A stretch of 64,000 nt of DNA from Macrostomum hystrix (Eukaryota; Animalia; Platyhelminthes), in NCBI GenBank assembly GCA_950097015.1, contig CATNEN010000005.1, positions 4,588,001 to 4,652,000 on the forward strand. The letters run 5' to 3'. Positions 3,624 through 62,814 of the stretch are shown here, piece by piece. The notes under the pieces were generated by a model. It saw only the letters and a list, made by a program, of their open reading frames with translations. It had not been told where the DNA came from and ran no database searches. How positions within the stretch are numbered: the first letter of the stretch is position 1; each line of letters opens with the position of its first letter. The translations under genes were made by a program, and so were the position numbers.

Positions 3624-5418
3624 ATATTGCCAAAGCCCAGGTGCACAGAAACTACATCCGGGCGAATGGACCAGTTCACCTGAACGACTCGGTCAGCAGT
3701 GAGGTCATCAACGAGACCGGATGTCGTACAGAGAGAGACTGTCTGCTCCTGTGCTATTCCCGTGACTGCGCTGCAGCCAGTGTGTCACCCAGCTCAGGTG
3801 TCTGCCAGCTGCTGCTCATCAACGATGCGTCGAGAACTCCGGGACCAAACGGAACTCACGCGGCCAGAGCTGTGGGATCAGAGGCCGGTGCGACAGTGTG
3901 GAAGGTGGACAACTTCGAGGAGCTGCTTCTGGCGAGACGCCTGACGAACTTTACTGTCCAATTTGGAAGTGAGTTGGAATGGTCTCAATGCATCAATGGT
4001 ATCTTTGGGCTTCGAGCTCGCGACCTTTCGGTCGGAAGTCCGAAACTAACATTGGGCCTTGGGGGTGAGTGGCAGACTGGTTAACGCGTCTGCCTCTCGC
4101 ACCAAGGTCCCCGAGCTCGATTCCGCGGCGAGGCCACATTCATTCGTTCGGAGAGAAGACTTGGGGGCTTGTCGTGAAATTTACGCCCTTGATGGCCAAC
4201 CTCAAAGGCACAGTAAAAGTGTACACTGCCTGACAATAAGACAGTCAGGGCAGATGTACACACCTGTGTGAGCGTATGCCTGTGTACGGTATCTGTGTGC
4301 GTGTGTGCTCAGGAGTCAGCGAATGTGCCTCCTCGCTGGCTGCGGGTCTATAGTGTCACCAAATGATGTGCCCTTGCCCGCAGCCCTCCTGCAAGTACTG
4401 TCATTATTCTGGGCCTTCACAGCCTTCTCAATCGCATCACTGGCTGGCCCAACTGGGCTCGACGCGCATGGAATTCCAGCCTCTCTTCTGTCCCATTTCA
4501 GACTCGAGCTGGGGCAGCAACGGCTCCATCCAACACCTGGTGATCCCCGTGAGCGGCTGCTACCGAATCGAAGCCTCAGGAGCTGCCGGCGGGAACAACA
4601 GCCACGTGAACTCGACCGGCGGCAGAGGCGCCTTCATCGCCGGCAGCTTCAACCTGACGGGCGGCTCCCAGCTGTCTGTGGTCGTCGGACAGGCCGGTGG
4701 CAGCGCCAACTCAACTCAAAGCGGTGGCGGAGGAGGTGGAGGCAGCTTCGTGTGGCGCACAACGGACAGTCAGCTGCTCCTGGCTGCAGGTGGAGGAGGT
4801 GGCGCTACAGTTTCAGTTTTTGACTTGAAATCTGAAGCAGGTAAATTGTTTTACCTGGATGTCCAGTTGGAGTCACGTTTGAATTTCCTGACTTCATTTT
4901 AGTTTGATAGTTTTCCCCGCGCAGGAATGGCGGGTCAGTCAGGAAGCAACGGCACCGATTCGTACGGAGCACAGCTGGAAAACGCGGGCTTCGGTGGCGT
5001 CAACGGCCAGCCGGGATTCAATGATCCGAGCTTGGCGAAGTCGAGCAGAAACTGCGGCGGCTGCGGCGCCGGCTGGCTTGGCAAGGCCGCGAACCCGGGA
5101 CGCAGCTCAAAGGACGGCGAGCGAGGCGGCAGTCTGGCCGACGGCTGGGTCGGCGGCAGAGCCGGAGACGGCAGCGCTGGCGACGGCGGCTTCGGTGGAG
5201 GCGGCGGCGCGGGCGGGTCCGCTGAAGGCCTCAAAGGTGCGGCCGGCGCTGGTGGCGGCTTCAGCGGCGGTGGAGCGGGTATCGCCTTCGGACACGCTGG
5301 CGGTGGAGGCGGGTCCCTCTGCGGCGGTGGCGACTGTGTCGCAGTTTCTGGCGGTGGTGGCAGCAGTGACGCCGGTCAAGGTCGAGTTGCGCTTCGATTG
5401 GTCGATAAAATTTGTTAA
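3624..5418 (+). CDS. PAN/apple + ALK/LTK-like glycine-rich domain protein, paralog 1; signal-peptide exon not found
   Basis: Exons 3624-3968, 4502-4840, 4925-5418, all GT-AG and phase 1. Exon lengths 345 and 339 equal those of paralogs 2 and 3. PAN-type C-x3-C-x4-C...C-x-L motif; GCYRIEASGAAGG...GSFNL...VVVGQAG...GGGGGGSFV...LLAAGGGGG...GGFGGGGG...GQGRVAL aligns to the ALK/LTK glycine-rich region. Confidence 0.8.
4061..4408 (+). mobile_element. tRNA-derived SINE family A, in intron of paralog 1
   Basis: A-box-like TGGCAGACTGGTTAACGCG and B-box-like GCTCGATTCC; shared body with six other copies; flanked by TGGGCCTT direct repeat (putative TSD). Confidence 0.85.
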
Positions 5419-5854
5419 ATCTACTGCGAGACACTTGGACTTCGACTTCGGCTCAGAGTGTCGACCAGGTTATAATAGTTCAACATTTCACAACCATGCG
5501 ACATTAATTGAGTAGTGTCATGTGAGCATCGTAGTCATCTTCAGATAAATATTTATTCTATTTGCTGTTTTCCTGTCACTCTCTTGGGTTGCTTTTCCTA
5601 CTTTTTCTCACATTTAATAATTTATTGGCCTGGACCTATCTTTGACGACTAATGAAATATAAGTTAACGACGTGACTGTCTTTGTTTAAAAGCACTATTA
5701 TAAACATCATTAAAAGTTCTTGATGTTCTTGAAAAACCTAACTGCCTCCATTTTTTGTTTAAAAATTTTTTTCCGGGGAAAGAAAAACTAACTTTCAAAG
5801 CCGTCCGACGTCGATGAATATCTCAACGATATGATGATGTTTTGTGATTATGTG

Positions 5855-6172
5855 ATTGTGGAACCCCCAAATTCATTGTGGAACAGAAATATCTATTGTG
5901 GAACCCACAAATCCATTGTGGAGCCCACAAATCCATTGTGGAACCCACAAATCCATTTTGGAACCCACAAATCCATTGTGGAACCCACAAATCCATTGTG
6001 GAACCCACAAATCCATTGTGGAACCCACAAATCCATTGTGGAACCCACAAATCCATTATGGAACATAAATATCTATTATGGAACCCACAAATCTATTGTG
6101 GAACCCACAAATCTATTGTGGAACCCACAAATCTATTGTGGAACCCACAAATCCATTGTGGAACCCCCAAAT
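5855..6172. repeat. Minisatellite, 20-bp unit (GAACCCACAAATCCATTGTG), ~15 copies
   Basis: Period 20 seen directly. Confidence 0.95.
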
Positions 6173-8884
6173 CATTTTTTGCAACCCAAAATTCAATTCC
6201 TTGGGGGGCTTAAACTATCGTGTCGTCTATTTATTTTTGACAAATCTGACATAGTACCTTTTTTATTAGTTTAAGTGATGATCTTTAGCGATAATCGTTA
6301 TTGGACTTATATTTTTACCCTTATTTGTCAGTTTTTGTAGAATACTGAATCGACTTTCCATGTTTTACAAGAAACATTTTCACTCTGACTAATACTTATG
6401 GAGTGTAGGAAAAATATTCATTTTTAGACTTTTTGATTTCGATGAAAATATATTTTATTTGTATTATGTGCAAAAAGAAGGCAAAATTTGTTGAAAATTT
6501 AAACTGTATTTTTATAATTACGTGTCTACTTTTTCATTACTACATACATTAATATGTTAGGCGAATTACGAGAGATTTTTGCAAAGCAAATAAAATTTGC
6601 ATAAAATATTCCTTTAAAACACATTCCATCACTAGTAAGTTTTTAAAGTTCCTTTCAGCCTATTTTCAACTTTTATATTGTTGATTTAATGCGTGGTACA
6701 ATATATATTTCTGAAAATTTCCGTTAAGATCAAAGATTAGCCGTTTTTAGCGGGAAAAGCTGCTTTCATCAACTTTGCATTCGGTACATGCGTGTATCTG
6801 CCTCTAGCCATCTACATTATCACTCTATTCAGAAAATCGATTTTGCTTAACTAAACTAGAGATAGCTACATGTAGTACGCACGTTAATTTTAGATTGGCG
6901 CACGCAAAGAAAGATCAGGATCGATTTTCTAGACGAATGGGCTTTGTTTTATAGAAGATTCCATTTATTTAAACAAGCTAAGATATTATTGATTTCTTTA
7001 TAAAAGTGCATTCTTTAGCGTAGCCATTTCTAGACTAGAATTTGGTTGTAAGCAGACAGTATTAGTTAAAACAATGTTCCCGGATATACTAATTTATTTT
7101 CGCTTTGAATCTTTTGAAACAATGAGAGACAAAAACATAAAAAATAGTTTTTTCCAGTGTAGCAAAAACATTTACTGATTGAATATTATATTATATTTTT
7201 TAGAAAAAACTGGCCTGTTATCACAGCTAAACAAATTTGCGTGCGAATAACATTTAAATTTAGAAGCAATGTATAGTAGCAATAGACACGCTAAACAGAA
7301 TCTATTTAAACAAAAAAATAGATAGAAACGAAATTTTAATAAATTTCAGTGACCAGTTTGAAATTAATTTTCACGTGAGCCTCTTGGCCTCAAAGAGCTA
7401 ACGTATTCGGATCTGAATATTAGTTCAAAATATTACTTAATCAATGAAAGACAGACACAGACATCGGCGCTTTAAAAACAAGTCATCTATAAAACAAAAG
7501 ATGTTCAAAAATAGGAAACAGAAAATAAGAACACGTTATTGATTTGCTAGTTAGTTTTTAGTCCGTCGATAGCAGTTGATTTTTCGGCCATACAATGAGT
7601 TATACAATCATTCTTAGAGCCTGCCTAATGCATGTTTTCATAAATCGCCTTGATTACATTCACGTTTTATTATAGTTAATACCATTATCACCATCACAGA
7701 AACTGCGCTGCAAAATAGCAAACAAAAAGCTTTTTTGTTTTACTGGAATGATATTATTTGAAAAGTTAAAAAAACTTGTCAATTGTCGTGCATAACAGAT
7801 CATTAGAAACTCACATTTTTCTATCAAATTGATTGCTTTTAACAACACAATCTCAGCCGTTTAAAAAGCATTGCCTGCGATATTATTACAGTAACCGTAC
7901 CGTACTAAATCAGTAAGATCTAAAAGTACTAATGCATCAATGCTTGAAAGAATAACAAAAAATATCTCTGCAATGAATAACAAGAAATAATTTGTTAAGA
8001 AACGCGGCAACTTATGCGTCCGAAACTGGTCTCCACTATAGACTAGTAAATAAAACGCATTAAAAAACAATGTAGCATAACTAACTTAGTTCATTGTGCA
8101 AGTTATGTACATAAATAAATATATATTACTGGCATATAGATCCAGTTCTAAAACCTACTGGTACTCCGACAGATAGAACACAATTATCACTGGTATGATG
8201 ACGGATCTATAGGACATAGGCTTTAACATCAAAGTCAGCAAATATTTGTTTTGTAGAAATTAAAGAAAATAGACTCTTCTAAAAGTGCTTTGATATGTGT
8301 GTTAGTCAAGTGCAAAAGACATGATTAGTATTTTTTAAACATAATTTGCATAAACCAGCCGAGCCCAAGATGCAGAGACTGATTGTTGTTTCCAGGAAAC
8401 TGTCAGGAAACTGTACGATTTTCAATCTGAGGCTCAGTTGGTTGTGACTTCCTGATATGCTACATTTAAGACAAAATGTGCTCACAAACTAAGTTTTAAA
8501 AAGCAAGTAGTGCATGCAGTTTTTACCTTCTAACAGTGTTCGCGCGCTTATTATATAGTTATATTATTATCACAAAGCCATTGCAGGGAGTCAACACATA
8601 GATAAGTACGTCAGACATTCAGAAAGGCTTGAATTTCAGTTGATAAAAAACTGTTAACAAAAATATGTTCGTTTATAGGCCAGAAATTGTCGGAGCAAAC
8701 AGAATATAAGCTGTGGACGGATTGAAGTATTAAATTGATACTCATAAAAATAGTTTATCAAATAATCTAACACGCATCAAGTCATCATCTTTATTGTCCT
8801 CTAGTAAATCTAGGAATTAAAATCAATACAAATTACAAACATGTAGCTCGGTTAGAAAACAAAGAAAACAAAATCAAAAGCAAT

Positions 8885-11800
8885 TTAAAGCAAATTGCAT
8901 GCCTTGCTGCTCGCCTGCTGCTGCTGCTGCTGCTGCTGTCTTTCTCCGCCACTACGACGACCTCCAGTGCCGCCGCCTCCGCCGCCTCCGCCGCCGCCAC
9001 CGCCGCGTTGTCGCTCCTGTCTAGCGAGTGCCGCGCTCGACGGTGGCGTGAAGGTGATCTCGCCGGATTCCCGTTTGTGCACCTTGTGCAAAGCGATCCG
9101 ATAGGTGCCAGTGATGGCCGATCTGTACGACTTTCCTGAGGCCTCCTCTAGAAGAGCCTCGCTAATGCCCAGCTGTAGCAAGTTCTTCCGCACCTCGAGC
9201 TCCTCCGGCCGCAGTTCGGACCGATTGGACACGCGCCGGGGATTCATCTCGTATTTCTCCAGAGCCGGCAGAAATTCTTCGCCCTCGAGCCAAGCCGATG
9301 CTTGAATGTCGGCCATGGTGGCGCGATCCGGCGGACTCAGCCTCAGAATGGACGCAATCAACGACTGAGCAGGCTCGGACAGAAATGCTGGCAGGTTGTA
9401 CTCACCGGCTAGGATGAGCTTTTTGAGCCGGCCGACTGTGTCGGCTCTGAAAGGCATCAAGCCGGTGAGCATGAAGTAGAGCAGGACGCCGAGAGCCCAG
9501 ACGTCAACCCGAGGGCCCTGGTAGGAGTCGTCGCGAAACAGTTCCGGAGCCGCGTAGGGCGGTGAGCCGCAGAAGGTATTCAACTCCTGTTGCGGCTTGG
9601 CCAATGTGCTGAAACCGAAGTCGCCAACTTTCACGTGCGACGGGCCGGAGAAGAACACGTTCTCGGCTTTTAGATCGCGATGGATCACGTGATGGTCGTG
9701 CTGCGGGCGGGTCGGTGGTTTGAATTAGTTTTTTTCCTACCTGAGTCTCTCTCAGTGGCTGTTTCAGAGTGCCCCACAAGCAGAAGCGAAATACATTAGT
9801 ACAATAGATAATAATAATTATTATTATTGCAGGAGGGCTGCGGGCAATGGCACATCATTTAGTGACACTTGACCCGCAGCCAGCGAGGAGGCAATTCTGC
9901 CCATTTCGCTGACTCCTGAGCACACACGCACACAGATACTGTACGTAGGCATACGCTCACACAGCTGTGTACATCTGCCCCGACTCTCACATTGTCAGGC
10001 AGTGTACACTCTCACTGTGCCTTGGAGGTTGGCCCTCAAGGGCGTAAATTGCACGACAAGCCACCAAAGCCTTCTCTCCGCGGCTGCGCCCCAAATGAAT
10101 GTGGCCTCGCCGTGGAATCGAACTTAGGGACCTTGGTGCGAAAGGCAAACGCGTTAACCGCTCTACCACCGATCCCCTTAGTAGTACGAGTACAGTAGAT
10201 GTGAAGAGTCATAATTGGCCTGTTGTACTAGCATCCATACATATGCGTCACAGGTACGATTCACTAAACATAAGCTTTAAAAAACCTAAAAAACACCTTC
10301 AGTGACTGTTATTCACCATTCCTCTCCTTCCAAAATACGCAGAATATATTTTTTTGTTTTACTTCTATACGCAACTCAGACCGAGACGAGCTAAAAATAC
10401 AATTTTATAAAATAGGCTCTATAAATTGTACATGATTACTTTTATTAAAGCGAATTTTTTTTCCAGTTTAACCGGATGACATGAATCTCATTCTTTTTGA
10501 CGCATAATTTGGCGATGGTACAGCTTATAGCTTATAGCCAACAATTTTTCGTAACTTCTCAGAACTTTCTTAGAAATAAGGCCAAAAAAGGAAATTCTAC
10601 AGCGGTTTGACATTTGACTTATTTGTGGCACGACCGATGCCGTTCAATGGTCATCGAATTACATTAGCCTAGGACAGGAAGCTAGGATCAATACCTATTA
10701 CCTACCCACAGATGAGGAAAAAAGCGAAATGGACGATTCGTGAAGCTCATTGTAAGCTCAGATAAGCTTGACCTGCCTGACCAAACAGAATCTCCCTAGG
10801 GAGTTTAGAAAGAAATGTGAGCCAGTTTTCCTAGCGAGCGGTTTTATGGCTATAGAGAGAGAGGAAATGTAAGGCAAGCTTGATATAGCCAGTCATTGAG
10901 TAGACATTCAGCAAGAGCATCAAATTGCACGACTACAAAGGGAAACAATAGCTTTACCTTTTTTCCCAAGCAGTTTTCGTCGAATAGGAAAAAAGTTACT
11001 GGGAAATCAAAGGTAAACTATCAGCATTGTGTCTTGTGTGTCTGATTGTGAATCTTACTTTGAGATCACAGGCCTAATGCCGGTTGTTTTGATTGCCTAT
11101 AGTTCACGTTTTTTAAACAATCTTGTTTTCTGGAAATCTGAGAGATTAAAGCATGATGCAACGAGAAATTAAATGTCTAGCTTAAGAACTCCAATTGCTT
11201 ATCTAGGAGCTTGTAGCCGAGTGGTTTTAGCGTCGGACTAACGACTTGAAGGTCGAGGGTTCGATTCCCGACTCCACTGAAACAATTTGTGTCCTTTAGC
11301 AACACACTAAACTCTGCATTGCTTCAGTTCACCCAGCTGTTAAATGGGTACCAGCATTAGCTGGGATAATTGAGGGTGGGTGTGGCGTCCCCCCAAGTCC
11401 ATGGACTGAACAGCTGTACGCAGCCTTCAGATGCGCCGCGTAATAGCAGCGGCTGTGCTGTCGGCTGCACATCTGGGCCGATTGGGGCAGGTGTAATCAG
11501 TTACTATTTATTTATCAAGAGCTGAGATTACAAATCGCGCACTACAACCTTAAAATCAACGCTTCAAAGCAACTTTAAAATAGATTAGGCGTTAACGTAA
11601 CGACGAAACGACTGCTCACCATATGCTTGATGGCTGAAGCCACCTGTGAGAAGATCACCCTCGCGTGCCGCTCGGAGAACCGTCCCTCCGAGGTGATCTT
11701 GGTGAATAGCTCGCCGCCCGGAGCATATTCCATCACGATGTGAATCTTTGCCACGCTCTCCATCACTTCGTACAGTCTGATAACGCACGGATGATGCAGC

Positions 11801-14800
11801 CTTTCCATCACGCTGACCTCGCGAGATAGCAGACGCTGCGTTTTTGCATCCAACTTGGTCTTGTCCAAGATTTTGATGGCCACTTTCTCTGCGGATGATC
11901 AAAAGTTGAGTATAAAGTAATTAGGATTACTCAAGCAAAGTATCTTGAAATCCTTCAATGACTTAATGACTTGAGGAACATGATCAGACCATTTGTGTGT
12001 GTCATTCTCAGCAGATTCTGTGTGTCATTCTCAGCAGATTCTGTGTGTCATTCTCAGCAGATTCTATGTGTCATTCTCAGCAGATTCTGTGTGTGATTCT
12101 CAGCAGACTCTGTGTGTCATTCTCAGCAGATTCTGTGTGTCATTCTCAGCAGATTCTGTGTGTCATTCTCAGCAGATTCTATGTGTCATTCTCAGCAGAT
12201 TCTGTGTGTGATTCTCAGCAGATTCTGTGTGTCATTCTCAGCAGATTCTGTGTGTCATTCTCAGCAGATTCTGTGTGACATTCTCAGCAGATTCTGTGTG
12301 TCATTCTCAGCAGATTCTGTGTGTCATTCTCAGCAGATTCTGTGTGTCATTCTCAACAGATTCTGTGTGACATTTCAAATCTACCTCTTATGATAAAAAG
12401 GCAGCGATCGAGAGCCTTAGCACTAATCATTGGAAGTACAACAAGCATTGACTGCTTGACGATGGCACAATAAATCAGAGAAAGAATGGTCTACAATAGA
12501 GAATTTGATATAAAGAACTTTAAAATTTGTACGCCGCTTTCAGTGCAGACGCTTGCCCTTGAGCATAGTTCAATTGCTCATTGTATAGACTTTTACAGGC
12601 TACACAGAAGCCATGCTAATAAATTTTCTATTCAATTCTTTTCTTTCCTTGTATCCAAAGACGCTGGAAGGCTGGCAACGATTTACCTCAGAGCCTCAAT
12701 CGGTCATTCTTCTATTTTCTTCCGCATGGGAATCATTTCATGCGGCATTTGAAGGGTTGGGGAGAGTGAGGGGCATTGTTAAACTGCTCCTCTTCCAGAC
12801 TGGGAGAAAAAAATCAGGTACAAACTGGATTAACTGTAAAGAGCTTGTAAAGTTCATTTACTTGCAATCGCCAAAATTCCTACCGTGAAAGCGGTTAGAC
12901 TTGGATCTGCGCTTTGCCAGCATAATTATAGCTAGACTCGGGCAAGAGACTCTCTTTCACTCACTTACTCAATGCTTCATCCTTTTGTCTAGTTTTTTTC
13001 GAACCTGTTCTAGGCTTTTAAGTTCAAAGCTTGAGTATAGACGGCAACATTTTTTCCGTTAATACCAAGCATGCTCAAGATGACCAACTTGGCTAGTGGG
13101 GAAGTGAAAGACTAGGGTGAGGAAGGGGGCGAATTTCAAAGTCAACCGGATTGAATAACGCGCGCGCCGTTGTAGCTCCCGATTCGCACAGGGTGCTAGG
13201 TTTGCGTTACCATGGTAACGAAATAAAAGTGCACCGACATTTTTCAAGCTTATAACCTCCCTAATGTGGAGAAAATTAAATTGAAAATATGAAACGAACA
13301 AGAAAGCAATTGACAATCGATTTTTAGCTAGGATTACCAATAAAGTTTTCTTTCAACAAAAACAAAGATGGAAGATTCAAATAGAGTCAATTGAAGATTT
13401 GCTTTTGTTAATTTTCTTTAGAACAAAATTCTGCAGCGAAACTGGAGAGAGGAGTCATAAAAGTACAGGTCCGGAAAAGTGGGGCCATTTGATTTGAAGC
13501 ATAATGGCATAGTCACTTACTAGAAGACAGATAGCATCTGTTGCCATAAAAAGGACAGAGGCAAGTATGCGGCAACACAGGCAATTATATATTCTGCAGT
13601 TGTTTAGCACAGCTCATTCATTCAAGCTCATAATAGCGACTATTTGACAATTCACCTCAATGCTTACATTCTGAAGCCGCTTTGTCAATAGAAAATGAGA
13701 GCAGTTGAGCCACATCGTCTGTTATCTACATTTTCGTTCCATTTGGTTGTAATTATTCTTAACTGTCAGAATTATCTTCCTTATGAGCAATTCATGACTT
13801 CCTCCATTGCTATGACCTCTTCTTTATGATCTATTCCACTACTCTATGACCAACTCTCAAATAATCATCTTTCTCTATGACTAAATATAAAAGGATCATA
13901 TTTCTCTATGACCAACTCTCAAAATTATCATCTTACTCTATGACCAACTATCAAAATGATCATCTTACTCTATGACCAACTATCAAAATGATCATCTTAC
14001 TCTATGACCAACTATCAAAATTATCATCTTACTCTATGACCAACTCTCAGATAATCATCTTACTCTATGACTAACTATAAAAGGATCATATTTCTCTATG
14101 ACCAACTCTCAAAATTATCATCTTTCTCTATGACCAACTCTCAAAATGATCATCTTACTCTAAGACCAACTATCAAAATGACCATCTTACTCTATGACCA
14201 ACTATCAAAATGATCATCTTACTCTATGACCAAATCTAAAAAAAGTTCATCTTTCTCACGACGTCAGTTTCTAGTCGTCATTTTATGTATTTTCAAGCAT
14301 CATTCTCTGCAGCACTAGCTTAGGGACACATGGTCAGGAAAGATTAAGTCCAAGGATAATGGAATTTGCTAGACTTGTATTATACTGCCCAGCTTTGTGA
14401 AAAACAGGATTTTTACCTTGCAGTTAATTGCTAAGCTAGGGATTTTGAGCCTTATTCATGCGAACTCAAGCCAATGCTGACTGTTGTTATCGCGAAATTA
14501 ATTCCGGTCCTGCAGCTCCGGATTTGTCCTGAATTAAATATTAACAAGCCTTGCCCGGCTCAGAGCTTGCTAGAAAGTATTGAAACTTCAGTGTCACACT
14601 GCTGTGCCATTGGCTGCATTAGAAATGCGAAATTATCATTGACCCGCTATTGTTATCTGCGATGGTGAACTAGCAAGCTAACTAAGTAACTTGATAACTC
14701 ACTAACTAACTAAGTAACTTGATAACTCACTAACTAACTAAATAACTTGATAACTCACTAACTAACTAAGTAACTTGATAACTCACTAACTAACTAAGTA

Positions 14801-15783: not shown

Positions 15784-15816
<33 letters not shown>

Positions 15817-21784: not shown

Positions 21785-21958
<174 letters not shown>

Positions 21959-23002: not shown

Positions 23003-23004
23003 AT

Positions 23005-24280
23005 GAGAGTGAGACTGGAGATAAATAGTGTGAAATACAGAGTACATTGTAGATAAATGGTGTGAAATACAGAGTGACTATGGAGATAAATGGTGTGAAA
23101 TACGGAGTGACACTGGAGATAAATGGTGTGAAATACGGAGTGACACTGGAGATAAATGGTGTGAAATACGGAGTGACATTGGAGATAAATAGTGTGAAAT
23201 ACAGAGTGACACTGGAGATAAATGGTGTGAAATAAGGAGTGACACTAGAGATAAATGGTGTGAAATACCGAGTGACACTGGAGATAAATGGTGTGAAATA
23301 CAGAGTGACACTGGAGATAAATGGTGTGAAATACAGAGTGACACTGGAGATAAATGGTGTGAAATACGGAGTGACACTGGAGATAAATGGTGTGAAATAC
23401 GGAGTGACACTGGAGATAAATGGTGTGAAATACGGAGTGACATTGGAGATAAATAGTGTGAAATACAGAGTGACACTGGAGATAAATGGTGTGAAATACG
23501 GAGTGACACTAGAGATAAATGGTGTGAAATACCGAGTGACACTGGAGATAAATGGTGTGAAATACAGAGTGACACTGGAGATAAATGGTGTGAAATACAG
23601 AGTGACACTGGAGATAAATGGTGTGAAATACAGAGTGACACTGGAGATAAATGGTGTGAAATACGGAGTGACACTGGAGATAAATGGTGCGAAATACAGA
23701 GTGACACTGGAGATAAATGGTGTGAAATACAGAGTGGTATTGAAGATAAATGGTGTGAAATACAGAGTGACATTGGAGATAAATGGTGTGAAATACAGAG
23801 TGACATTGGAGATAAATGGTGTGAAATACAGAGTGACATTGGAGATAAATGGTGTGAAATACAGAGTGACACTGGAGATAAATGGTGTGAAATACAGAGT
23901 GACACTGGAGATAAATGGTGTGAAATACGGAGTGACACTGGAGATAAATGGTGCGAAATACAGAGTGACACTGGAGATAAATGGTGTGAAATACAGAGTG
24001 ACACTGGAGATAAATGGTGCGAAATACAGAGTGACACTGGAGATAAATAGTGTGAAATACAGAGTGGCATTGAAGATAAATGGTGTGAAATACGGAGTGA
24101 CATTGGAGATAAATGGTGTGAAATACGGAGTGACATTGGAGATAAATGGTGTGAAATACGGAGTGACATTGGAGATAAATTGTGTGAAATACAGAGTGAC
24201 ACTGGTGATAAATGGTGTGAAATACAGAGTGACATTGGAGATAAATGGTGTGAAATACAGAGTGACACTGGAGATAATAC
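23005..24280. repeat. Minisatellite, 33-bp unit (GAGTGACACTGGAGATAAATGGTGTGAAATACA), ~38 copies
   Basis: Translates as an 11-aa repeat VTLEINGVKYR, giving period 33. Confidence 0.96.
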
Positions 24281-24574
24281 GTGAAGAAAAGTGGAATTTA
24301 ATAAAATAGTGGAATGTTCACTCACCATTTTTAATTCTATTTCAGGGGCTGTGCCATCTTTGTAAGACATTTTTGCCCTAAAATGAGTTTTTACCTAGAT
24401 CAATTTCAAATCCACAATTAATTCTTGCCAAAGTCCCTTTCCTCACAATGAGGTTTTTATTCCCATTATGGGATAGAGAATGATTATACTATCCCCTCTG
24501 CTGCGATCTCATTGGCCCAAAGATTTTAAGTACTTCCCAACGCATTCCAGGAACTTCCCACTTCTTTTGCACTC

Positions 24575-25125
24575 AATCACCCTTCAGAGAGTGTCTCAAT
24601 CCCTTCACACCGTTCAGAGAGTGTCTCAATCCCCTCACACCCTTCAGAGAGTGTCTCAATCCCCTCACACCCTTCAGAGAGGGTCTCAATCCCCTCACAC
24701 CCTTCAGAGAGGGTCTCAATCCCCTCACACCCTTCAGAGAGTGTCTCAATCCCTCACACCCTTCAGAGAGTGTCTCAATCCCCTCACACCCTTCAGAGAG
24801 GGTCTCAATCCCCTCACACCCTTCAGAGAGGGTCTCAATCCCCTCACACCGTTCAGAGAGTGTCTCAATCCCTTCACACCCTTCAGAGAGTGTCTCAATC
24901 CCTTCACACCCTTCAGAGAGTGTCTCAATCCCTTCACACCCTTCAGAGAGTGTCTCAATCCCTTCACACCCTTCAGAGAATGTCTCAATCCCCTCACACC
25001 GTTCAGAGAGTGTCTCAATCCCCTCACACCGTTCAGAGAGGGTCTCAATCCCCTCACACCGTTCAGAGAGTGTCTCAATCCCCTCACACCCTTCAGAGAG
25101 TGTCTCAATCCCTTCACACCCTTCT
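24575..25125. repeat. Minisatellite, 30-bp unit (CCTTCAGAGAGTGTCTCAATCCCCTCACAC), ~18 copies
   Basis: Period 30 seen directly. Confidence 0.95.
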
Positions 25126-25611
25126 TAAATCCCAACACGTCGTTTTAGTTGACTTTGGGACTCTTCTACTCATGCGATAGTTGCTATGGTTACAGAAAAA
25201 TGAAATTTACGCAGTGCAAAGTCACACTCACTCTCTTTTTCACTCTCTCCCTGGTGCTTTCCCGATGAGAACTTTTTTTCCCGTACGATATTATGCCAAT
25301 TTTTCTATCCCTCGCCACGCCTCTCAAACCTCAAGTGCACTCAAATTGTTACTTGTTTTTGGACGAAAAATCTATATTTTAGGGCATTAAAACTGCACTC
25401 TGTAGTTTGCGCGTGTCTCAAAAACTTTTCTTGCACTTTTGCTTGGACTTAAAAGAGAGTGAATGGGTCTCTACTGAAGGCTGAAAGAATTGCAAAAGAA
25501 AGAATTCAATGAATAGTTCAAAAAAAATTTCTTTGAAAAGCATCTGTTGAGAAAAATGAAAGCTTTTCGCTTTTCTTTACTCATAGCTACTATGAGTAGC
25601 ATAAAATTAAA

Positions 25612-25888: not shown

Positions 25889-25960
25889 AGGAGTAGAAAA
25901 AATACAATAGTACAATTATGTGCTTTAATCACAATTAGATAAATTGGTTGTGCCATCCTC

Positions 25961-28669
25961 CTAGCAGCTGTCGCCGAGCAATCGGAAGGCAACGCCACCT
26001 TGACCGCTCTCGAAATTGCCTCCAGTGATGCCGACAAAGTCGAAGCCGCTGCAGTAGGAGCCCCCGCTGCCTCCGGCGTGTCCGAAGCCGATGCTGGCTC
26101 CGCCGCCGCTGAAGCCGCCACCAGCGCCGGCCGCACCTTTGAGGCCTTCAGCGGACCCGCCCGCGCCGCCGCCTCCACCGAAGCCGCCGTCGCCAGCGCT
26201 GCCGTCTCCGGCTCTGCCGCCGACCCAGCCATCGGCCAGACTGCCGCCTCGCTCGCCGTCCGTTGAGCTGCGTCCCGGGTTCGCGGCCTTGCCAAGCCAG
26301 CCGGCGCCGCAGCCGCCGCAGTTTCTGCTCGACTTCGCCAAGCTCGGATCATTGAATCCCGGCTGGCCGTTGACACCACCGAAGCCCGCGTTTTCCAGCT
26401 GTGCTCCGTACGAATCGGTGCCGTTGCTTCCTGACTGACCCGCCATTCCTGCGCGGGGAAAACTATCAAACTAAAATGAAGTCAGGAAATTCAAACGTGA
26501 CTCCAACTGGACATCCAGGTAAAACAATTTACCTGCTTCAGATTTCAAGTCAAAAACTGAAACTGTAGCGCCACCTCCTCCACCTGCAGCCAGGAGCAGC
26601 TGACTGTCCGTTGTGCGCCACACGAAGCTGCCTCCACCTCCTCCGCCACCGCTTTGAGTTGAGTTGGCGCTGCCACCGGCCTGTCCGACGACCACAGACA
26701 GCTGGGAGCCGCCCGTCAGGTTGAAGCTGCCGGCGATGAAGGCGCCTCTGCCGCCGGTCGAGTTCACGTGGCTGTTGTTCCCGCCGGCAGCTCCTGAGGC
26801 TTCGATTCGGTAGCAGCCGCTCACGGGGATCACCAGGTGCTGGATGGAGCCGTTGCTGCCCCAGCTCGAGTCTAAAATGGGACAGAAGAGAGGCTGGAAT
26901 TCCATGCGCATCGAGCCCAGTTGGGCCAGCCAGTGATGCGATTGAGAAGGCTGTGAAGGCCCAGAATAATGACAGTACTTGCAGGAGGGCTGCGGGCAAG
27001 GGCACATCATTTGGTGACACTAGACCCGCAGCCAGCGAGGAGGCACAATCGCTGACTCCTGAGCACACACGCACACAGATACCGTACACAGGCACACGCT
27101 CACACAGGTGTGTACATCTGCCCTGACCTTCTTATTGTCAGGCAGTGTACACTTTTACTGTGCCTTTGAGGTTGGCCATCAAGGGCGTAAATTTCACGAC
27201 AAGCCCCCAAGTCTTCTCTCCGACCGAATGAATGTGGCCTCGCCGCGGAATCGAGCTCGGGGACCTTGGTGCGAGAGGCAGACGCGTTAACCGGTCTGCC
27301 ACTCACCCCAAAGGCCCAATGTTAGTTTCGGACTTCCGACCGAAAGGTAGCGAGCTCGAATCTTAGCTCAAAGATCAAAGGTAGTAGCTTCATTGAGACC
27401 ATTCCAACTCACTTCCAAACTGGACAGTAAAGTTCGTCAGGCGTCTCGCCCGAAGCAGCTCCTCGAAGTTGTCCACTTTCCATACTGTCGCACCGGCCTC
27501 TGATCCCACAGCTCTGGCCGCGTGAGTTCCGTTCGGTCCCGGAGTTCTCGACGCATCCTTGATGAGCAGCAGCTGGCAGACACCTGAGCTGGGTGACACA
27601 CTGGCTGCAGCGCAGTCCCTCAGGTAGCACCTGTACAGACAGTCCCTCACGGACGAGCAGTTGGTCTCGTTGATGACCTCACTGCTGACCGAGTCGTTCA
27701 GGTGAACTGGTCCATTCGCCTGGATGTAGTTTCTGTGCACCTGGGCTTTGGCAATATCTGAGGAGAGCATGACATTATTTTTAATACGACTCTCCATTGA
27801 AATTAATAATCGATCCATTTCTTTAGGTTGATAAGACCTAGATGGATAGAATCAAGTGTACAGCTGTCACATTGAGAGGCCGAAATATCTACCCCAATTT
27901 CTACGCCACCTGGCTGAGATTCTAACTCCCGACCGCACTGTCAGACGTCGTGCGAGTAACAAGTTTCCAGTTGGGCCAAAATGACAACAAACGATTATGA
28001 ATGGACACATTGCATTCAGGGAACAAATTATTTTAGTGGTACTTACCATACGAATTAAACACAATGGTTGCAAACAGAAGTAATTCTTCTATCCTTAGAT
28101 TAAGCATTTAAATTGGTGACACAGTTCGCGATTTCTTTAAAACTTACCGAGGAAGGATTCTAGCTAAAGACAGTTCTGAGGAAATGTATGTGCTCATGGT
28201 ATTTTTATAATCCCTATCTTTTTTGTTTGCAGACAGTTATGCGGCATCATTTTATCCTCGAAATTGTGAATTTGTGAGAGCTGTTGAGAATAATTGTTCA
28301 GCTAAAATGTCTGCCGCAAGGTGCTGATATTTTGCATTGCATGGCCAGTTTGTGAAAATGTTTCAAGCATTTCTTAACTGAAGTGGTCTTTTGAAGAAAA
28401 TATTAATTTCCTTTTTAAGAGTGGAATAATGGAATTGTAGGAAGGAAGCAAGGAAGGAAGGAAGCAAGGAAGGAAGGAAGGAAGGAAGGAAGGAAGGAAG
28501 GAAGGAAAGAAGGAAGGAAGGAAGGAAGGAAGGAAGGAAGGAAGGAAGTAAGGAGGGAAGGAAGGAAGGAAGGAGACAGCGAGCATAACGAAACGGACTC
28601 ACTTCGGCAGACAACGGCCAAGATCGCTACAACGAAAGTAACGAATTGAATGTAGCAAAAAACGTTCAT
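25961..28669 (-). CDS. Secreted PAN/apple + ALK/LTK-like glycine-rich domain protein, paralog 2 (412 aa, complete)
   Basis: Exons 28669-28603 (MNVFCYIQFVTFVVAILAVVCR, signal-peptide-like), 27757-27413, 26871-26533, 26448-25961; all GT-AG, phase 1; total 1239 nt. Confidence 0.85.
26968..27312 (-). mobile_element. SINE family A in intron 2 of paralog 2 (same insertion as 4061-4408)
   Basis: Near-identical to 4061-4408 with the same flanks. Confidence 0.88.
28437..28573. repeat. (GGAA)n microsatellite, intron 1 of paralog 2
   Basis: Seen directly. Confidence 0.95.
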
Positions 28670-29117: not shown

Positions 29118-30479
29118 CTACGGGTGTGTCATAAGTAATGTCACTGTGGTTGTTGTGCGGGAACCCAAAGCAATAATCATCCAAAAATATTATATTCTGA
29201 AAGTATATTTATTGAGAAGTTGCCACCACACCTGAGCAGCAATTTTAATGTCTATGGCCAAAACTGTCGCAAGAATTTGTTAATCAGATTTAGCAAGCGC
29301 AACGCGATGAAATCTTCTTTTTGCAACGAGCAAAACTCAACATGAATCACGACAAGACGCACATCCAGTTCTACGCTTTCATTCGCTTCAAGCTTGGAAA
29401 ATCTGCACTTGAAGTAGAGGAGGATCTCCGGAACACACTGCCAGACAACTGCCCAACTCGCAGGACAATTTACAGGTGGTTTCAGAACTTTACTGATCCT
29501 GGGTTCGAATTGGGAGATGCCGCCAGATCTGGACGACCATGTTCAACCAGGACAATAGAGAACATCGAAGTCATCAGCGAACTGGTCAAGGAAGACCCGC
29601 GGCAGTCTGTCAGGGAGCTAGCGGACTGCTTGGAGATTGATTTCAAGACAGTCCATCGCATCTTGACAGAGGATCTCCATCTCCGAAACGTCTGCTCGGT
29701 CTGGGTCCCCCATGACCTCACTGCGGACCAACGTCAGGCCCGTGTGAACTGCGCCAATCAGATCCGCAAGGTGTTCAGCAGCCGGGGCTTGGGTGACATC
29801 CTAAACTTCCTGGTTGTTGAGGATGAGACCTGGCTCCACCTGGATGGCAAAAGCAGCAAGGCAGACAATCGCTGCTGGCTGGGAGCTGGGGACTCCAGGC
29901 TGACTGTGACCAGGAGGTCCATCTCAGACAAGAAGACCATGCTGCTGGTGGCATTCACGCCAAACAAACGAGTCTCCATCTGTACAACTCCGCCAAACAC
30001 CAAGGTCGATGGCCAGTATACTTCATCGACTTTGTCCGACACACTGGGAACCTCTGGCGCACGCTCCGGTCAAACCCGATTCACCTGAACGAAGTTCTGT
30101 GGCAGATGGACAACGCACGGCCCCACACCTGTCAGACTGTTTCGGATTTTCTGGCTGGACGGCGAGTAAATCTGCTCTGGCAGAGTCCCTACAGCCCAGA
30201 CTTCAACTTGTGCGACAGGTTTCTCTTTAAATGGCTGAAGGCAGACTTTTCCCAGAGAAGTTTCGCAAACCATGATGAGGTCAAAGAAGCCGCGTTGCAC
30301 TGGTTCCGACAGCTGGAGGAAAAACACCTGCAGGCTGAGGTAGAGAAGCTGTACGAGCACTGCCAGAGGGTGATTGATATTGGGGGACACTATGTTGTTG
30401 ATTGATACAGTTTCGTTCATCTACGATTGTTAGTTGGTCTGTTTTACCCTCAGTGACATTACTTATGACACACCCGAAG
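29118..30479 (+). mobile_element. Tc1/mariner DNA transposon, DD34D transposase with a single -1 frameshift
   Basis: Perfect 26-bp TIR core CGGGTGTGTCATAAGTAATGTCACTG (29121-29146 / 30451-30476), extendable to 29 bp with 1 mismatch and TA flanks (29116-17, 30480-81). HTH region, WVPHDL, VVEDETW, then after a frameshift near 30018 QMDNARPH...PYSPDFNLCD, with 34 residues between D2 and D3. Confidence 0.95.
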
Positions 30480-31977: not shown

Positions 31978-34900
31978 CTAGCAGGTGCCTGAATTCAGGT
32001 GAATCAGAATGACGCCATGAGCACTCATTGTGTTTCCACCGGTGCTGGCATTGCGGTTGATGCAACCACAGAAGGAGCCGCCGCCACCACCGGCGTGACC
32101 AGAACTAATACCTGCGCCACCGCCGCTGAAGCCTCCGCCTGCACCAGGAACTCCGTCGGTTGAATGGCTGCTGCCGGCCCCGCCGCCGCCACCGAAGCCG
32201 CCATCGCCAGTGTTGCCGTCTCCGGCTCTGCCGCCAACCCAGCCGTCAGCCAGACTGCCGCCCCGCTCGCCGTCAAATGAGTTGCGTCTCGGGTTCAGAG
32301 CCTTTCCAAGCCAGCCGGCACCGCAGCCGCCGATGTTTAAATTGATGAGTTGCGGATTGTTGAGCCCCGGCTGACCGTCGGAGCCTCCCAAGCCGATGAA
32401 TGCAGGATTTTCGCCGAGAGAATCGCCTCCTTTGGTTCCCGCCTCTCCTGGGCGACCTGGATGTTTTTGTTTCCTTCGACAGAACTTAAATATATAGCAC
32501 ACATGTTATATTCACTCCTTGATAGTTTTAATTAAAAATTGAAAATAAGTCAGCTCATGATCCACAGATAATGATAATATTACCGTTGCCAGTGACGCCC
32601 GAATATGAGTAAACGCTGGCTCCGCCTCCTCCGCCGGCTGCAAGGAGCAGCTGAGTGTCCATTGTGCGCCACACGAAGCTGCCTCCGCCTCCTCCTCCAC
32701 CGCAGTTTGAATTCGCAGCATCACCGCCCGCCTGTCCGACAAGGACTGACAGCTGGGTGTCACGTGACAGGTTGAAGCTGCCGGCGATGAAGGCGCCTCT
32801 GCCGCCAACCTTGCTCAGAGATTTGATTCCTCCGCCAGCAGCTCCTGAGGCTTCGATTCGATAGCAGCCGCTCACGGGGATCACCAGGTGCTGGATGGAG
32901 CCGTTGCTGCCCCAGCTCGAGTCTGAAATGGCCGACGCGAGCGTCAAGGATTTCAAGTCACTCGATCCAGCTCGAGAACATCACAGCTGATGGTAGAGAC
33001 TCACTTCCAAACTGGACAGTGAAGTTCGTCAGGCGTCTCGCCAGAAGCAGCTCCTCGAAGTTGTCCGCCTTCCATACTGTCGCACCGGCCTCTGATCCCA
33101 CAGCTCTGGCCGCGTGAGTTCCGTTCGGTCCCGGAGTTCTCGACGCATCCTTGATGAGCAGCAGCTGGCAGACACCTGAGCTGGGTGACACACTGGCTGC
33201 AGCGCAGTCCCTCATGTAGCACCTGTACAGACAGTCCCTCACGGACCAGCAGTTGGTCTCGTTGATGACCTCACTGCTGACAGAGTCGTTGAGTAAGAGG
33301 GGTCGTCCAGGGGATTCTAAATATTTTGCACCTGTCGCCGCTATCCTAGCTGGAAGATTTATAAAAGAGGAATTTGTTATGGGCGTGTAACTATTGCCAA
33401 CAAAGAGACATCAAAGCAGGCAGCACGAACTTACCGATGAGACCAAAAAGAAAAGCAGTTGCAAACCGAAAATTAGTTATTGTAGTCATTGTGATTTTTT
33501 AAATAATAAAATATTAAAGTTTGTTACTGTGGACAATGCACAGCCAAACAGCTTTATAGTCGGAATTCGCTACAGTAGCTAGCATTTTTAATATCCATTT
33601 GCAATTACAGACAGTGCGAATGCAACTTTGAGTGCAACCAGTCATGGGGGTGGTGCGATGAGTTGTGGACCATCCTAGTCTCGTACTAAGGTCCCTGTGC
33701 TGGAATCCAGGACGATGGCACTTTAATTTGGGTCTCAGACGACCCAAAGTCGCTTTAGAACTTAGGACGTTTAAGGATTAACAGCTAAGCTATACAGTGA
33801 GAGTGCAGACAGTCACTGACTGCTGACTGAGTGTTTCAGTATGAGCGGTTCATCTAGTCGAGGCACTCAATATTATTAAGGAAAAAAACGGAATTATGAC
33901 TGAAAATGAGAACAGCGCGTTTCCAATGACACCAGACTACTTGCACAGTGTCCTCATGTTAAACTACAGCAGCTAATTTCGTTGCTATTCGAGCGTTAAT
34001 TTCAACGTGTGTTTCTGTATCTTTTTTTCACGATGATTTGCACTTTCATCTGAACACCTAGGGCTTTTGTTCATGCGTCTTTAGATTTGGTAGTAAATTG
34101 ACAAGTGAATGACTGTGAAAATAGCACGGCTGCTTCGTCCATCAACGACAATAGACACTCGTGCCCTTCGGCGCCATGGATGAATAATATTTTATCGGCG
34201 TTTCTGTGTGTCATGTCTTAAAAAAAGAAATTTTATTCATGGACCGATAGCCAAGATTGGCCAAGGGACAACAGCGATGCGACCACAACATGACTATGAC
34301 TCTACTCTGATTTTTACATCATGCATGTTCTGCTTCAGTTTGTCATGCTCAGTTTAATTCTTCAGTAAAATTCACCTTACTAAGCTTGCTTGCGTGGTTA
34401 GCTGAATCGTTGTTTTGGTGAGCGCTGATTGGCTGGGCCGCCCCTGTCTGGCCCTCGTCCCGGGTTGCCCTTCCCCTAGCTGCACCGTGATTGGCCATTG
34501 GGTGGTTGGGTTGGGGTGGTGGGGTAGGGCGGCGTGGGAGCGGGTGCCTACCCCGGCCCCAGGGTATGAGGCAATATAAATGTGCGGCTCAAGGGGTAGC
34601 TGGTCCGCCGCCCCTTACCATACACTCTCCGACTACGTGGGCCCTGCATTTTTCTATTTCGATTGACGCTAGATCTACTCGACTCCATTCTCCAGAGAGG
34701 GGGGTCTTCCGTGTGTCCTGACGCCGACCAGTGGGATGGCCTGTAAACTCTATAGCCTATAGTTAAATCCTATGAGCTTAGTAGTCTCGTTTCGATGCTT
34801 CAGTCTTAAATCTGTGCAGCATCAAGGGATCGATCTCTTCAAAATCAGCAAGTGGCCTTAAACAGTCGAATCAGAATAAGACAGTTTCTGTGCGTTGAAG

Positions 34901-34984
34901 CATGTACTCTTGAATCAAAGAATTGAACTTACCAAAGATGGCTGCAAACAGCAGTGCTGCAGGTAGCTGGGCCGGTAGCTTCAT
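31978..34984 (-). CDS. Secreted PAN/apple + ALK/LTK-like glycine-rich domain protein, paralog 3 (404 aa, complete)
   Basis: Exons 34984-34933 (MKLPAQLPAALLFAAIF, signal-peptide-like; donor GTAAGT), 33349-33005, 32922-32584, 32456-31978; all phase 1; exons 2 and 3 again 345 and 339 nt; total 1215 nt. Confidence 0.85.
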
Positions 34985-62731: not shown

Positions 62732-62814
62732 ATTTGCTAACACGACTGCTGGGCAAATAATTCGGTTGCTATGGTGATGATGCGACTGCCCCTTCTCATT
62801 TGTATCTCACTTCC

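What the first reader, a model, noticed from the sequence alone, without database searches (positions are those of the whole stretch)
3624..34984. Family of secreted, stand-alone ALK/LTK-type glycine-rich modules fused to a PAN/apple domain
Seen: three intact 4-exon-type genes (signal peptide, PAN, two glycine-rich-domain exons) with identical internal exon lengths and phases. Established: in ALK/LTK receptor kinases this TNF-like/polyglycine module is the ligand-binding ectodomain, followed by EGF, transmembrane and kinase parts; PAN domains bind proteins or glycans. Seen: each protein ends at a terminal Cys (KIC*, DSC*, GTC*) just after the last strand (GQGRVAL, GQGGVAF, AHGVILI), which by my recollection is where ALK continues into its EGF module. 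There is no transmembrane segment or kinase. Inference: a lineage-expanded family of soluble ALK-ectodomain-like proteins (decoy/ligand shuttle, lectin-like recognition, mucus/adhesive or reproductive secretion). This is the best candidate for an undescribed system in the window.
Basis: partly seen in the sequence, partly recalled or inferred. Interest (0 to 1): 0.75.

Follow-up and report, generated by a model that had tools for sequence, protein, structure and literature searches.

The report
Secreted kinase-less ALK-type glycine-rich proteins
Three neighbouring flatworm genes encode secreted proteins made of a small PAN/apple-like head and the complete ligand-binding module of the ALK/LTK receptors, with no membrane anchor or kinase. 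They belong to a family of about 150 such genes in this genome that is in public databases but has not been studied.

Summary
The observation largely holds. The window is flatworm DNA (Macrostomum type, not human) and carries three paralogous genes. All three have a 345-nt PAN-like exon, a 339-nt exon and a roughly 480-494-nt exon, and every intron is phase 1. All three end at a C-terminal Cys (KIC*, DSC*, GTC*).

Two copies have a signal-peptide exon. Copy 1 has none that I could find, so "three intact genes" is only partly right.

- **Head:** the window's own head exon folds as a divergent PAN/apple domain with four conserved Cys.
- **No receptor parts:** there is no TM segment, EGF module or kinase.
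- **Family size:** the genome holds at least 149 such loci.

The same architecture already exists, automatically named and unstudied, in M. lignano and in corals. This scan also met it earlier on other DNA of this genome.

My best reading is a family of soluble extracellular binding or recognition proteins. In this reading a rigid polyglycine scaffold displays variable segments, as in phage tail-fibre adhesins. This is inferred, not shown. A decoy role for ALK ligands is unlikely.

The parts
3624..3968 (+). Copy 1, PAN-like head exon (345 nt, phase 1 to 1)
   Evidence: PAN_1 is sub-threshold at E 0.057. The exon is 91% identical in protein to the copy 2 head.
4502..4840 (+). Copy 1, N-terminal half of the glycine-rich (GRD) domain (339 nt, phase 1 to 1)
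   Evidence: PF12810 gives E 2.9e-12 and 47.5 bits. phmmer against PDB finds ALK, LTK and SCD-2 at 2.4e-5.
4925..5418 (+). Copy 1, C-terminal half of the GRD, ending ...RLVDKIC and a stop
   Evidence: Coordinates are. The translation is 63% identical to the folded relative P0297. The terminal Cys is conserved in 25 of 25 family members.
28603..28669 (-). Copy 2, exon 1: signal peptide MNVFCYIQFVTFVVAILAVVCR, phase-1 GTGAGT donor
   Evidence: Hydrophobicity scan. KD19 is 2.61.
27413..27757 (-). Copy 2, PAN-like head exon (345 nt)
   Evidence: The AF2 model of this exon has pLDDT 81 and pTM 0.76. Its top structural matches are all PAN/apple domains. PAN_1 gives E 0.0065.
26533..26871 (-). Copy 2, N-terminal half of the GRD (339 nt)
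   Evidence: PF12810 gives E 2.9e-12. The protein is identical to copy 1.
25961..26448 (-). Copy 2, C-terminal half of the GRD, ending ...RLLGDSC and a stop
34933..34984 (-). Copy 3, exon 1: signal peptide MKLPAQLPAALLFAAIF, phase-1 GTAAGT donor
   Evidence: The exon is intact in the closest paralogue L002, with 3 synonymous and 2 conservative changes.
33435..33489 (-). Candidate alternative or pseudo first exon inside intron 1 of copy 3 (MTTITNFRFATAFLFGLI)
   Evidence: It has a phase-1 donor. Its counterpart in L002 is broken by indels, so it is probably not the conserved exon 1.
33005..33349 (-). Copy 3, PAN-like head exon (345 nt)
   Evidence: A 295-nt tract is 97% identical to copy 2.
32584..32922 (-). 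Copy 3, N-terminal half of the GRD (339 nt)
   Evidence: PF12810 gives E 3.1e-10 and 40.9 bits.
31978..32456 (-). Copy 3, C-terminal half of the GRD, ending ...HLNSGTC and a stop
2952..5341 (+). Inverted duplicated or converted segment shared with copy 2 (28442-26032), 95.5% identical including introns
   Evidence: blastn. Site pattern showing the mosaic.

Best explanation
**What is shown.** The three genes are members of a Macrostomum family of about 150 genes encoding N-glycosylated, secreted proteins of about 400-410 aa. Each has three parts:
- a signal peptide;
- a divergent PAN/apple domain with four conserved Cys;
- a complete ALK/LTK-type 'TG' module (a TNF-like beta-sandwich plus a polyglycine-II lattice).

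The protein ends at a conserved Cys, at the position where ALK continues into its EGF-like module. There is no membrane anchor and no kinase.

**What is inferred.** With no signalling part, the proteins can only act by binding outside the cell. I propose the following.
- The glycine motifs, which are under strong purifying selection, form a rigid scaffold.
- The segments between them vary from paralogue to paralogue and form the contact surface. This is how the TNF-like plus glycine-rich tips of phage tail fibres recognise their receptors.
- The PAN head adds a second, lectin-like or protein-binding site. Each molecule could then bridge or coat a target such as glycans or proteins on microbes, mucus or other surfaces.
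- Tandem duplication and gene conversion keep producing variants, giving a recognition repertoire.
For: **Gene models:**

**Domain identity**
- PF12810 scores above the cut-off.
- The family profile matches ALK at 7e-16, LTK at 8.5e-13 and SCD-2 at 6e-11, over nearly the whole domain.

**Head**
- Four Cys are invariant.
- PAN_1 is the only Pfam family hit, in 11 of 24 heads.

**Secreted, no anchor**
- Signal peptides are present in copies 2 and 3 and in relatives.
- The highest hydrophobicity (19-residue Kyte-Doolittle window, KD19) is at most 1.2, and there are 7-11 NxS/T sequons per protein.
- A stop follows 0-7 residues after the conserved Cys in 25 of 25 members.

**Family**
- At least 109, 150 and 149 exon matches were found for the three coding exons.
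- The exon order is collinear in all 22 loci fetched.

**Selection**
- dN/dS between copies is 0.35-0.56.
- Conserved GRD columns give 0.05-0.16 and variable GRD columns 0.84-0.85.
- Conserved glycine motifs alternate with variable segments.
- The copies are mosaics from gene conversion.

**Analogy**
- The gp38 adhesin has the same arrangement of glycine-rich motifs alternating with hypervariable segments (GRM/HVS) (PMC12032242).
Against: - No expression, localisation or binding data exist for any member. No transcript of this species was found in the protein collections.
- The variable segments evolve nearly neutrally (dN/dS about 0.85, not above 1), so positive diversifying selection is not shown. 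The column classes were also defined from the same alignment, which is circular.
- The fold was tested on an M. lignano relative, not on the window's own spliced product. I could not hand that product in.
- I could not map the variable segments onto the model, so it is untested whether they cluster on one face.
- Copy 1 may be a 5'-truncated dead copy.
Confidence: 0.55

Rival explanations
1. These are structural secretory products. The glycine-rich, Cys-terminated, heavily glycosylated proteins would be building blocks of a secreted material such as mucus, rhabdites, adhesive, eggshell or seminal fluid. The terminal or odd Cys would cross-link molecules.
For: - Copy number is very high and the genes lie in tandem clusters.
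- Glycine makes up 33-36% of the last exon, and each protein has 7-11 N-glycosylation sequons.
- The terminal Cys is conserved in 25 of 25 members.
- Cys counts are odd in some copies.
Against: - Every characterised occurrence of this module (receptor kinases, phage fibres) is a specific binding domain.
- The window genes have no repetitive or mucin-like stretch.
Confidence: 0.25
2. These are soluble decoys or shuttles for the ligand of a flatworm ALK-type receptor.
For: The module is a full structural counterpart of the ALK/LTK cytokine-binding domain. Soluble receptor ectodomains act as decoys in other systems (general knowledge).
Against: - About 150 paralogues that are only 45-65% identical to one another in the GRD fit poorly with trapping one conserved ligand.
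- No ALKAL-type exon was found. That search is weak and inconclusive.
- No canonical ALK was identified here. MAM hits belong to an unrelated giant gene, and the 'receptor tyrosine kinase' names of M. lignano relatives are automatic. One such entry is a model fused with IFT140.
- The same stand-alone module occurs in bacteria and phages, which have no ALK signalling.
Confidence: 0.07
3. These are non-functional duplicates: the window copies are decaying pseudogenes of a large family.
For: - Copy 1 has no signal-peptide exon. Upstream of it lie tandem repeats and what looks like a retroelement fragment (by eye).
- Copy 2 has lost one Cys of the C-terminal Cys pair.
- About 9 of 149 family exon-4 matches contain stops.
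Against: - All nine coding exons (2-4) are open, with intact GT/AG sites and preserved lengths and phases.
- dN/dS is 0.35-0.56, and 0.05-0.16 at conserved columns.
- Gene conversion could, however, mask decay.
Confidence: 0.08
4. These are exons of a larger receptor gene that splices on to EGF, TM and kinase exons.
For: A protein kinase gene lies about 9 kb downstream of copy 2 on the same strand (8885-16847).
Against: - That kinase matches Pkinase (Ser/Thr type) better than the tyrosine-kinase model. Its first coding exon has its own ATG and no TM segment.
- An in-frame stop follows the conserved terminal Cys in 25 of 25 members.
- The M. lignano and coral proteins examined that are complete at the C-terminus end at the same point.
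Confidence: 0.02

Closest known systems
Ligand-binding TG domain (TNF-like plus glycine-rich) of the ALK/LTK receptor tyrosine kinases (PDB 7NX0, 7MZY, 7N00; C. elegans SCD-2 7LIR)
   Different: There is no EGF-like module, TM helix, kinase, MAM or LDLa domain. The protein stops at the Cys that aligns near ALK C987. It has an N-terminal PAN head instead. There are about 150 paralogues rather than one or two genes.
Uncharacterised PAN_1 + ALK_LTK_GRD proteins of corals (Stylophora pistillata AWC38_SpisGene21703, Porites harrisoni ABFA07_017308) and the Macrostomum lignano entries named 'Apple domain-containing protein' or 'receptor protein-tyrosine kinase' (e.g. PAA57358.1, A0A1I8GEH1)
   Same: The order is the same: signal peptide, PAN, GRD. 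Sizes are similar (370-456 aa), and the protein ends right after the last strand with no TM. The M. lignano GRDs are 56-63% identical to the window genes.
   Different: - The coral proteins have an extra roughly 80-aa module between PAN and GRD, and their PAN passes Pfam's threshold.
- The window heads are more divergent. hhalign against a coral protein aligns the Cys core, but at only 1.4% probability.
- None of these proteins has been studied.
Phage tail-fibre receptor-binding tips with TNF-like plus glycine-rich domains (cyanophage Pam3 gp24, PDB 7YPX; polyglycine-II sandwich of S16/T-even gp38)
   Different: The phage proteins have an N-terminal helical trimerisation and attachment domain and need a chaperone. 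Similarity is far lower than to ALK/LTK. The flatworm proteins have a PAN head and are eukaryotic, intron-containing genes.
PAN/apple domains (HGF N domain, plasminogen PAp, apicomplexan microneme lectins SML-2 and TgMIC4)
   Different: The Pfam score is below threshold. The window copies have five Cys. No ligand-binding residues could be compared.

Membership tests
ALK_LTK_GRD domain family (Pfam PF12810) | Match to the family HMM above the curated cut-off | tested here: met
   The middle exons score 47.5, 47.5 and 40.9 bits against a cut-off of 24.5. The last exon alone gives no hit, probably because of composition filtering. It is covered by the family profile that matches ALK over positions 11-316.
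ALK_LTK_GRD domain family (Pfam PF12810) | TNF-like beta-sandwich combined with a polyglycine-II lattice (the fold of ALK/LTK TG) | tested here: met
ALK/LTK receptor tyrosine kinases | Transmembrane helix and intracellular tyrosine kinase domain on the same polypeptide | tested here: not met
   A stop codon follows directly after the GRD in all three copies and in 25 of 25 family members. No hydrophobic segment is present. The nearby kinase is a separate Ser/Thr-type gene.
ALK/LTK receptor tyrosine kinases | Membrane-proximal EGF-like module after the GRD | tested here: not met
   The model and profile alignments end at ALK 986/987. Only 0-7 residues follow the terminal Cys.
PAN/apple domain (Pfam PAN_1, PF00024) | Match to the family HMM above the curated cut-off | tested here: not met
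   The window heads score 13.7-16.7 bits against 21.4. Of 24 family heads, 11 match at E <= 0.1 (best 1.2e-4), and no other family matches.
PAN/apple domain (Pfam PAN_1, PF00024) | Core of four to six conserved cysteines (PMC9249922 abstract) | tested here: met
   Four Cys and one Trp are invariant or nearly so across 24-28 heads.
PAN/apple domain (Pfam PAN_1, PF00024) | PAN/apple fold (helix packed on an antiparallel sheet) | tested here: met
Phage TNF-like plus glycine-rich tail-fibre adhesins (Pam3 gp24 type) | N-terminal helical trimerisation and baseplate-docking domain | tested here: not met
   The N-terminal part is a PAN-like domain. [quoted passage not shown]

The most novel reading that the evidence does not exclude
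The roughly 150 PAN-GRD genes form a diversified extracellular recognition repertoire of a flatworm, serving innate immunity or surface and microbe recognition. It would be built on the same rigid polyglycine/TNF-like scaffold with variable tips that phages use to recognise hosts and that ALK/LTK later used to bind cytokines. It would be an animal counterpart of the fibrinogen-related (FREP) or C1q-domain expansions, on a scaffold not known before in that role.
Probability: 0.2. Interest if true: 0.75.

Novelty: new variant of a known kind. Interest (0 to 1): 0.5.

Why it matters
In the literature I could search, the ALK/LTK glycine-rich module is discussed only as a receptor ectodomain, and in one paper as a phage fibre tip.

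A large animal family of free, secreted copies, shared with corals, suggests the module is an old general-purpose extracellular binding domain that the kinase lineage recruited. This gives a tractable system for asking what the module binds when no kinase is attached. Macrostomum lignano, which has close relatives of these genes, is, to my knowledge, amenable to RNAi, in situ hybridisation and transgenesis.

It also flags wrong automatic names in public databases, such as 'receptor protein-tyrosine kinase' and 'PE-PGRS family protein'.

Tried and rejected
- **Joined spliced protein.** I did not hand it to any search or fold tool. All searches were exon by exon, by reference, so the fold test rests on a relative.
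- **Last exon alone.** It gave no hit in Pfam or against PDB sequences.
- **Transcripts of this species.** I looked in the big protein search and two word searches. Only M. lignano, coral, bacterial, phage and metagenome relatives came up, with 65% identity at most.
- **Signal-peptide exon for copy 1.** A hydrophobicity and phase scan, blastn-short and tblastn with the other copies' first exons found nothing convincing. The weak candidate at 3275-3335 also lies in the intron of copy 2.
- **ALKAL-type ligand (PF15129).** No hit. The control did not ring either, so this is uninformative.
- **Canonical ALK via MAM domains.** Hits were swamped by one giant multi-MAM gene, so this is inconclusive.
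- **hhalign of the flatworm head profile against a coral protein.** It aligned the Cys core but with 1.4% probability.
- **Literature.** Searches for PF12810, ALK_LTK_GRD, Macrostomum with 'glycine-rich' or with apple/PAN terms, and Mlig028980 found no study of the family. One fungal genome paper notes PF12810 proteins of unknown function.
- **Positive selection.** Variable columns give dN/dS of about 0.85, not above 1.


Full report
**Origin and handling**

The window is G000:C5:4588001-4652000 of a 220-Mb assembly. Every close protein relative comes from the flatworm Macrostomum lignano, at 65% identity or less. The genome is therefore a Macrostomum-type flatworm, not human, and nothing was withheld for that reason.

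I never submitted the joined protein to a search or fold tool. The fold test of the glycine-rich domain therefore rests on a public relative.

**The observation**

Reading both strands and locating the splice motifs by script gives three paralogous genes.

| Copy | Strand | Exon 1 | Exon 2 | Exon 3 | Exon 4 |
|---|---|---|---|---|---|
| 1 | + | none found | 3624-3968 | 4502-4840 | 4925-5418 |
| 2 | - | 28669-28603 | 27757-27413 | 26871-26533 | 26448-25961 |
| 3 | - | 34984-34933 | 33349-33005 | 32922-32584 | 32456-31978 |

- Exon 2 is 345 nt and exon 3 is 339 nt in all three copies.
- Every junction is phase 1 with a GT/AG intron.

Copies 2 and 3 begin with short hydrophobic first exons: MNVFCYIQFVTFVVAILAVVCR and MKLPAQLPAALLFAAIF.

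For copy 3 there is a second candidate first exon nearer to the gene (33489-33435). The closest paralogue elsewhere in the genome is L002 (C1:652800-655800). There the distal exon is intact, with three synonymous and two conservative changes, while the near one is broken by indels.

Copy 1 has no counterpart of either first exon in the 3.6 kb between it and the preceding gene. Upstream of position 2952 its similarity to copy 2 stops at tandem repeats. "Three intact genes" is thus not established.

**What the exons encode**

*Glycine-rich domain.*
- The 339-nt exon matches Pfam ALK_LTK_GRD at 47.5, 47.5 and 40.9 bits against a cut-off of 24.5.
- It also finds ALK, LTK and C. elegans SCD-2 among solved structures (E 2.4e-5).
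- The last exon alone finds nothing, as is common for sequence that is one-third glycine.
- A profile of the family, including the window exons (alignment A1), matches ALK over profile positions 11-316 (E 7e-16), LTK (8.5e-13) and SCD-2 (6e-11).
- I folded the M. lignano relative P0297, which is 56% and 63% identical to the window's two GRD exons. The model has pLDDT 80.8 overall and above 90 through the GRD.
- Foldseek's top 21 PDB matches are all ALK, LTK or SCD-2 (E 1e-10).
- In the 7N00 and 7NX4 chains, which include the EGF-like module, the alignment also stops at 985.
- In the sequence alignment the family's terminal Cys region falls at ALK C987.

*Head.*
- By sequence the head is only a sub-threshold PAN_1 match (13.7-16.7 bits against 21.4).
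- PAN_1 is the only family hit, in 11 of 24 family heads (best E 1.2e-4).
- Four Cys and a Trp are invariant or nearly so.
- The head is one exon, so I could fold the window's own sequence (copy 2). The model has pLDDT 81 and pTM 0.76.
- In an unbiased comparison with 48,161 PDB representatives, the top ranks are almost all PAN/apple domains:
- Foldseek gives probability 0.99 but E of only 0.03.

*No anchor.* Outside the signal peptides no 19-residue window exceeds a Kyte-Doolittle mean of 1.2. Each protein carries 7-11 NxS/T sequons. No hydrophobic tail follows the last Cys, so a GPI signal is unlikely.

**No onward splicing**

Twenty-two further loci of the family were fetched. All show the same collinear order of head, GRD-N and GRD-C. 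Together with the window copies, 25 of 25 end with the last strand, a conserved Cys, 0-7 more residues and a stop.

The M. lignano and coral proteins I examined that are complete at the C-terminus end at the same point.

The kinase gene 9 kb downstream of copy 2 on the same strand (8885-16847) is separate. It is a Pkinase-type (Ser/Thr) gene whose first coding exon has its own start and no TM segment.

**Family size and dynamics**

- Six-frame searches of the whole assembly found at least 109 PF12810 exon matches. That list missed two of the window's own copies, so it is an undercount.
- The searches also found at least 150 head-exon matches and at least 149 last-exon matches, only about nine with internal stops.
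- Most lie in clusters on contig C1. By eye I traced at least 30 complete collinear triplets.

Within the window:
- Copies 1 and 2 are convergent, inverted and 95.5% identical over 2.4 kb including introns. They flank the kinase gene.
- Copies 2 and 3 are in tandem, separated by a Mos1-like transposase remnant.
- The copies are mosaics. Copy 2 groups with copy 1 in the first 70 nt of exon 2, in all of exon 3 (72 sites to 1) and in the first 350 nt of exon 4. It groups with copy 3 across the PAN core (23 sites to 2). This indicates gene conversion among paralogues.
- dN/dS between copies is 0.35-0.56.

Across close paralogue pairs, conserved GRD columns give dN/dS of 0.05-0.16 and variable columns 0.84-0.85. 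The scaffold is strongly constrained and the intervening segments are nearly free to change. Positive selection is not demonstrated, and the column classes come from the same alignment.

**Relatives elsewhere**

The exhaustive protein search with the 339-nt exon found 4,749 proteins at E <= 1e-3.
- The best scorers by summed score are giant multi-GRD proteins of Flavobacteriia with T9SS sorting signals.
- The most identical are M. lignano entries with automatic names: 'Apple domain-containing protein', 'receptor protein-tyrosine kinase' and 'PE-PGRS family protein'.
- One 2,348-aa 'receptor protein-tyrosine kinase' is a gene model fused with IFT140.

ESM Atlas clusters and word searches show PAN_1 + ALK_LTK_GRD proteins in Cnidaria.
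- My own Pfam scan confirms signal peptide, PAN_1, GRD and no TM in Stylophora pistillata and Porites harrisoni proteins of 450-456 aa.
- It also shows EGF-plus-GRD variants in Nematostella and other corals.
- GRD-only proteins occur in phage- and bacteria-dominated clusters.

The architecture is therefore catalogued in public databases but unstudied. Nine literature searches found no paper on it. One fungal genome paper remarks that PF12810 proteins have no known function.

This scan had already met the same family on other pieces of this genome (s1-339213 and others). I re-tested that note's two claims, the ALK-like fold and the presence in corals, and they hold.

**How it most likely works**

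*Shown:* these are secreted proteins with two extracellular binding-type domains and no signalling part.

*Inferred:* they act by binding.

- It has conserved glycine motifs and a hypervariable distal tip.
- Its authors noted its resemblance to C. elegans ALK (PMC9608196).
- The gp38 adhesins work the same way, with conserved glycine motifs as a compact core and hypervariable loops as the binding site (PMC12032242).

The flatworm family shows the same alternation of invariant glycine motifs and variable segments.

With a PAN head, and many PAN/apple domains binding glycans or proteins, each molecule could bridge two targets. The family's size, clustering and gene conversion would supply variants.

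I rate this recognition and binding reading at about 0.55. The rivals are rated as follows:
- a structural secretory-material role, about 0.25;
- an ALK-ligand decoy, about 0.07, because 150 diverging paralogues fit badly with one conserved ligand and because bacteria and phages carry the free module without any ALK pathway;
- pseudogenes, about 0.08;
- part of a larger receptor gene, about 0.02.

**Verdict**

This is a real feature. The anatomy was correctly read except for copy 1's missing 5' exon and the sub-threshold PAN sequence match.

It is a kinase-less, secreted variant of the ALK/LTK ligand-binding module. It is massively expanded in this flatworm and shared in architecture with corals. 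It is present in databases under misleading automatic names and is functionally unexplored.

Interest is moderate (0.5). It is not a new kind of domain or a new architecture. It is, however, an unusually large and unstudied family that makes the ancestral, receptor-independent role of the ALK module testable.

Noticed in passing
window 8885-16847 (- strand): A multi-exon protein kinase gene (Pkinase, Ser/Thr type; CAMK/NIM1-like by eye) lies between the convergent copies 1 and 2. The open frame around its first coding exon runs on into an (HPSI)n microsatellite translation.
   Followed up: partly
window 29321-30405 (+ strand): A Mos1/mariner-like transposase remnant (HTH_48, HTH_32, DDE_3) lies between copies 2 and 3. 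It is split into two frames near 30088-30106.
   Followed up: partly
window 45598-62731 (+ strand): A large Dopey/DOP1 gene (Dopey_N and DOP1_C matches). Long coding-looking tandem repeats fill its introns, for example at 46203-46850 and 61047-62121.
   Followed up: partly
window 4040-4300 and 27330-26980; copies at 9827-10169, 21216-21412, 22625-23004, 46877-47209, 52294-52532: Intron 2 of copies 1 and 2 contains a dispersed repeat of about 330 bp, 79-87% identical between copies. It looks like a SINE-type element.
   Followed up: no
window 2290-2760, 5823-6274, 11993-12393, 23078-25180, 35431-35861, 62800-63401: There are many long tandem-repeat arrays with open frames on both strands. They produce spurious long ORFs.
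   Followed up: no
G000:C38:5255464-5290571: One locus holds more than 50 consecutive MAM-domain matches in open frames of up to 3,150 aa. It is a giant multi-MAM protein gene.
   Followed up: no
window 3720-3765 (copy 1, PAN core): Copy 1 differs from both other copies in a tight cluster of sites around the first Cys residues of the PAN core (GCRTERDCLLLCYS against NCSSVRDCLYRCYL), although its flanks are 95-99% identical to copy 2. This is either conversion from a third donor or local rapid change.
   Followed up: partly
P0001 and related proteins (public Flavobacteriia MAGs): Bacterial proteins of 2,000-6,000 aa carry up to 10 tandem ALK/LTK-type glycine-rich domains with T9SS sorting signals. 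They were the highest-scoring hits of the flatworm exon.
   Followed up: no
L004 (G000:C24:5746000-5749000): This is a sub-family of the same proteins in which the whole glycine-rich domain is a single 305-aa open frame with no intron. It resembles M. lignano PAA57358.1.
   Followed up: partly
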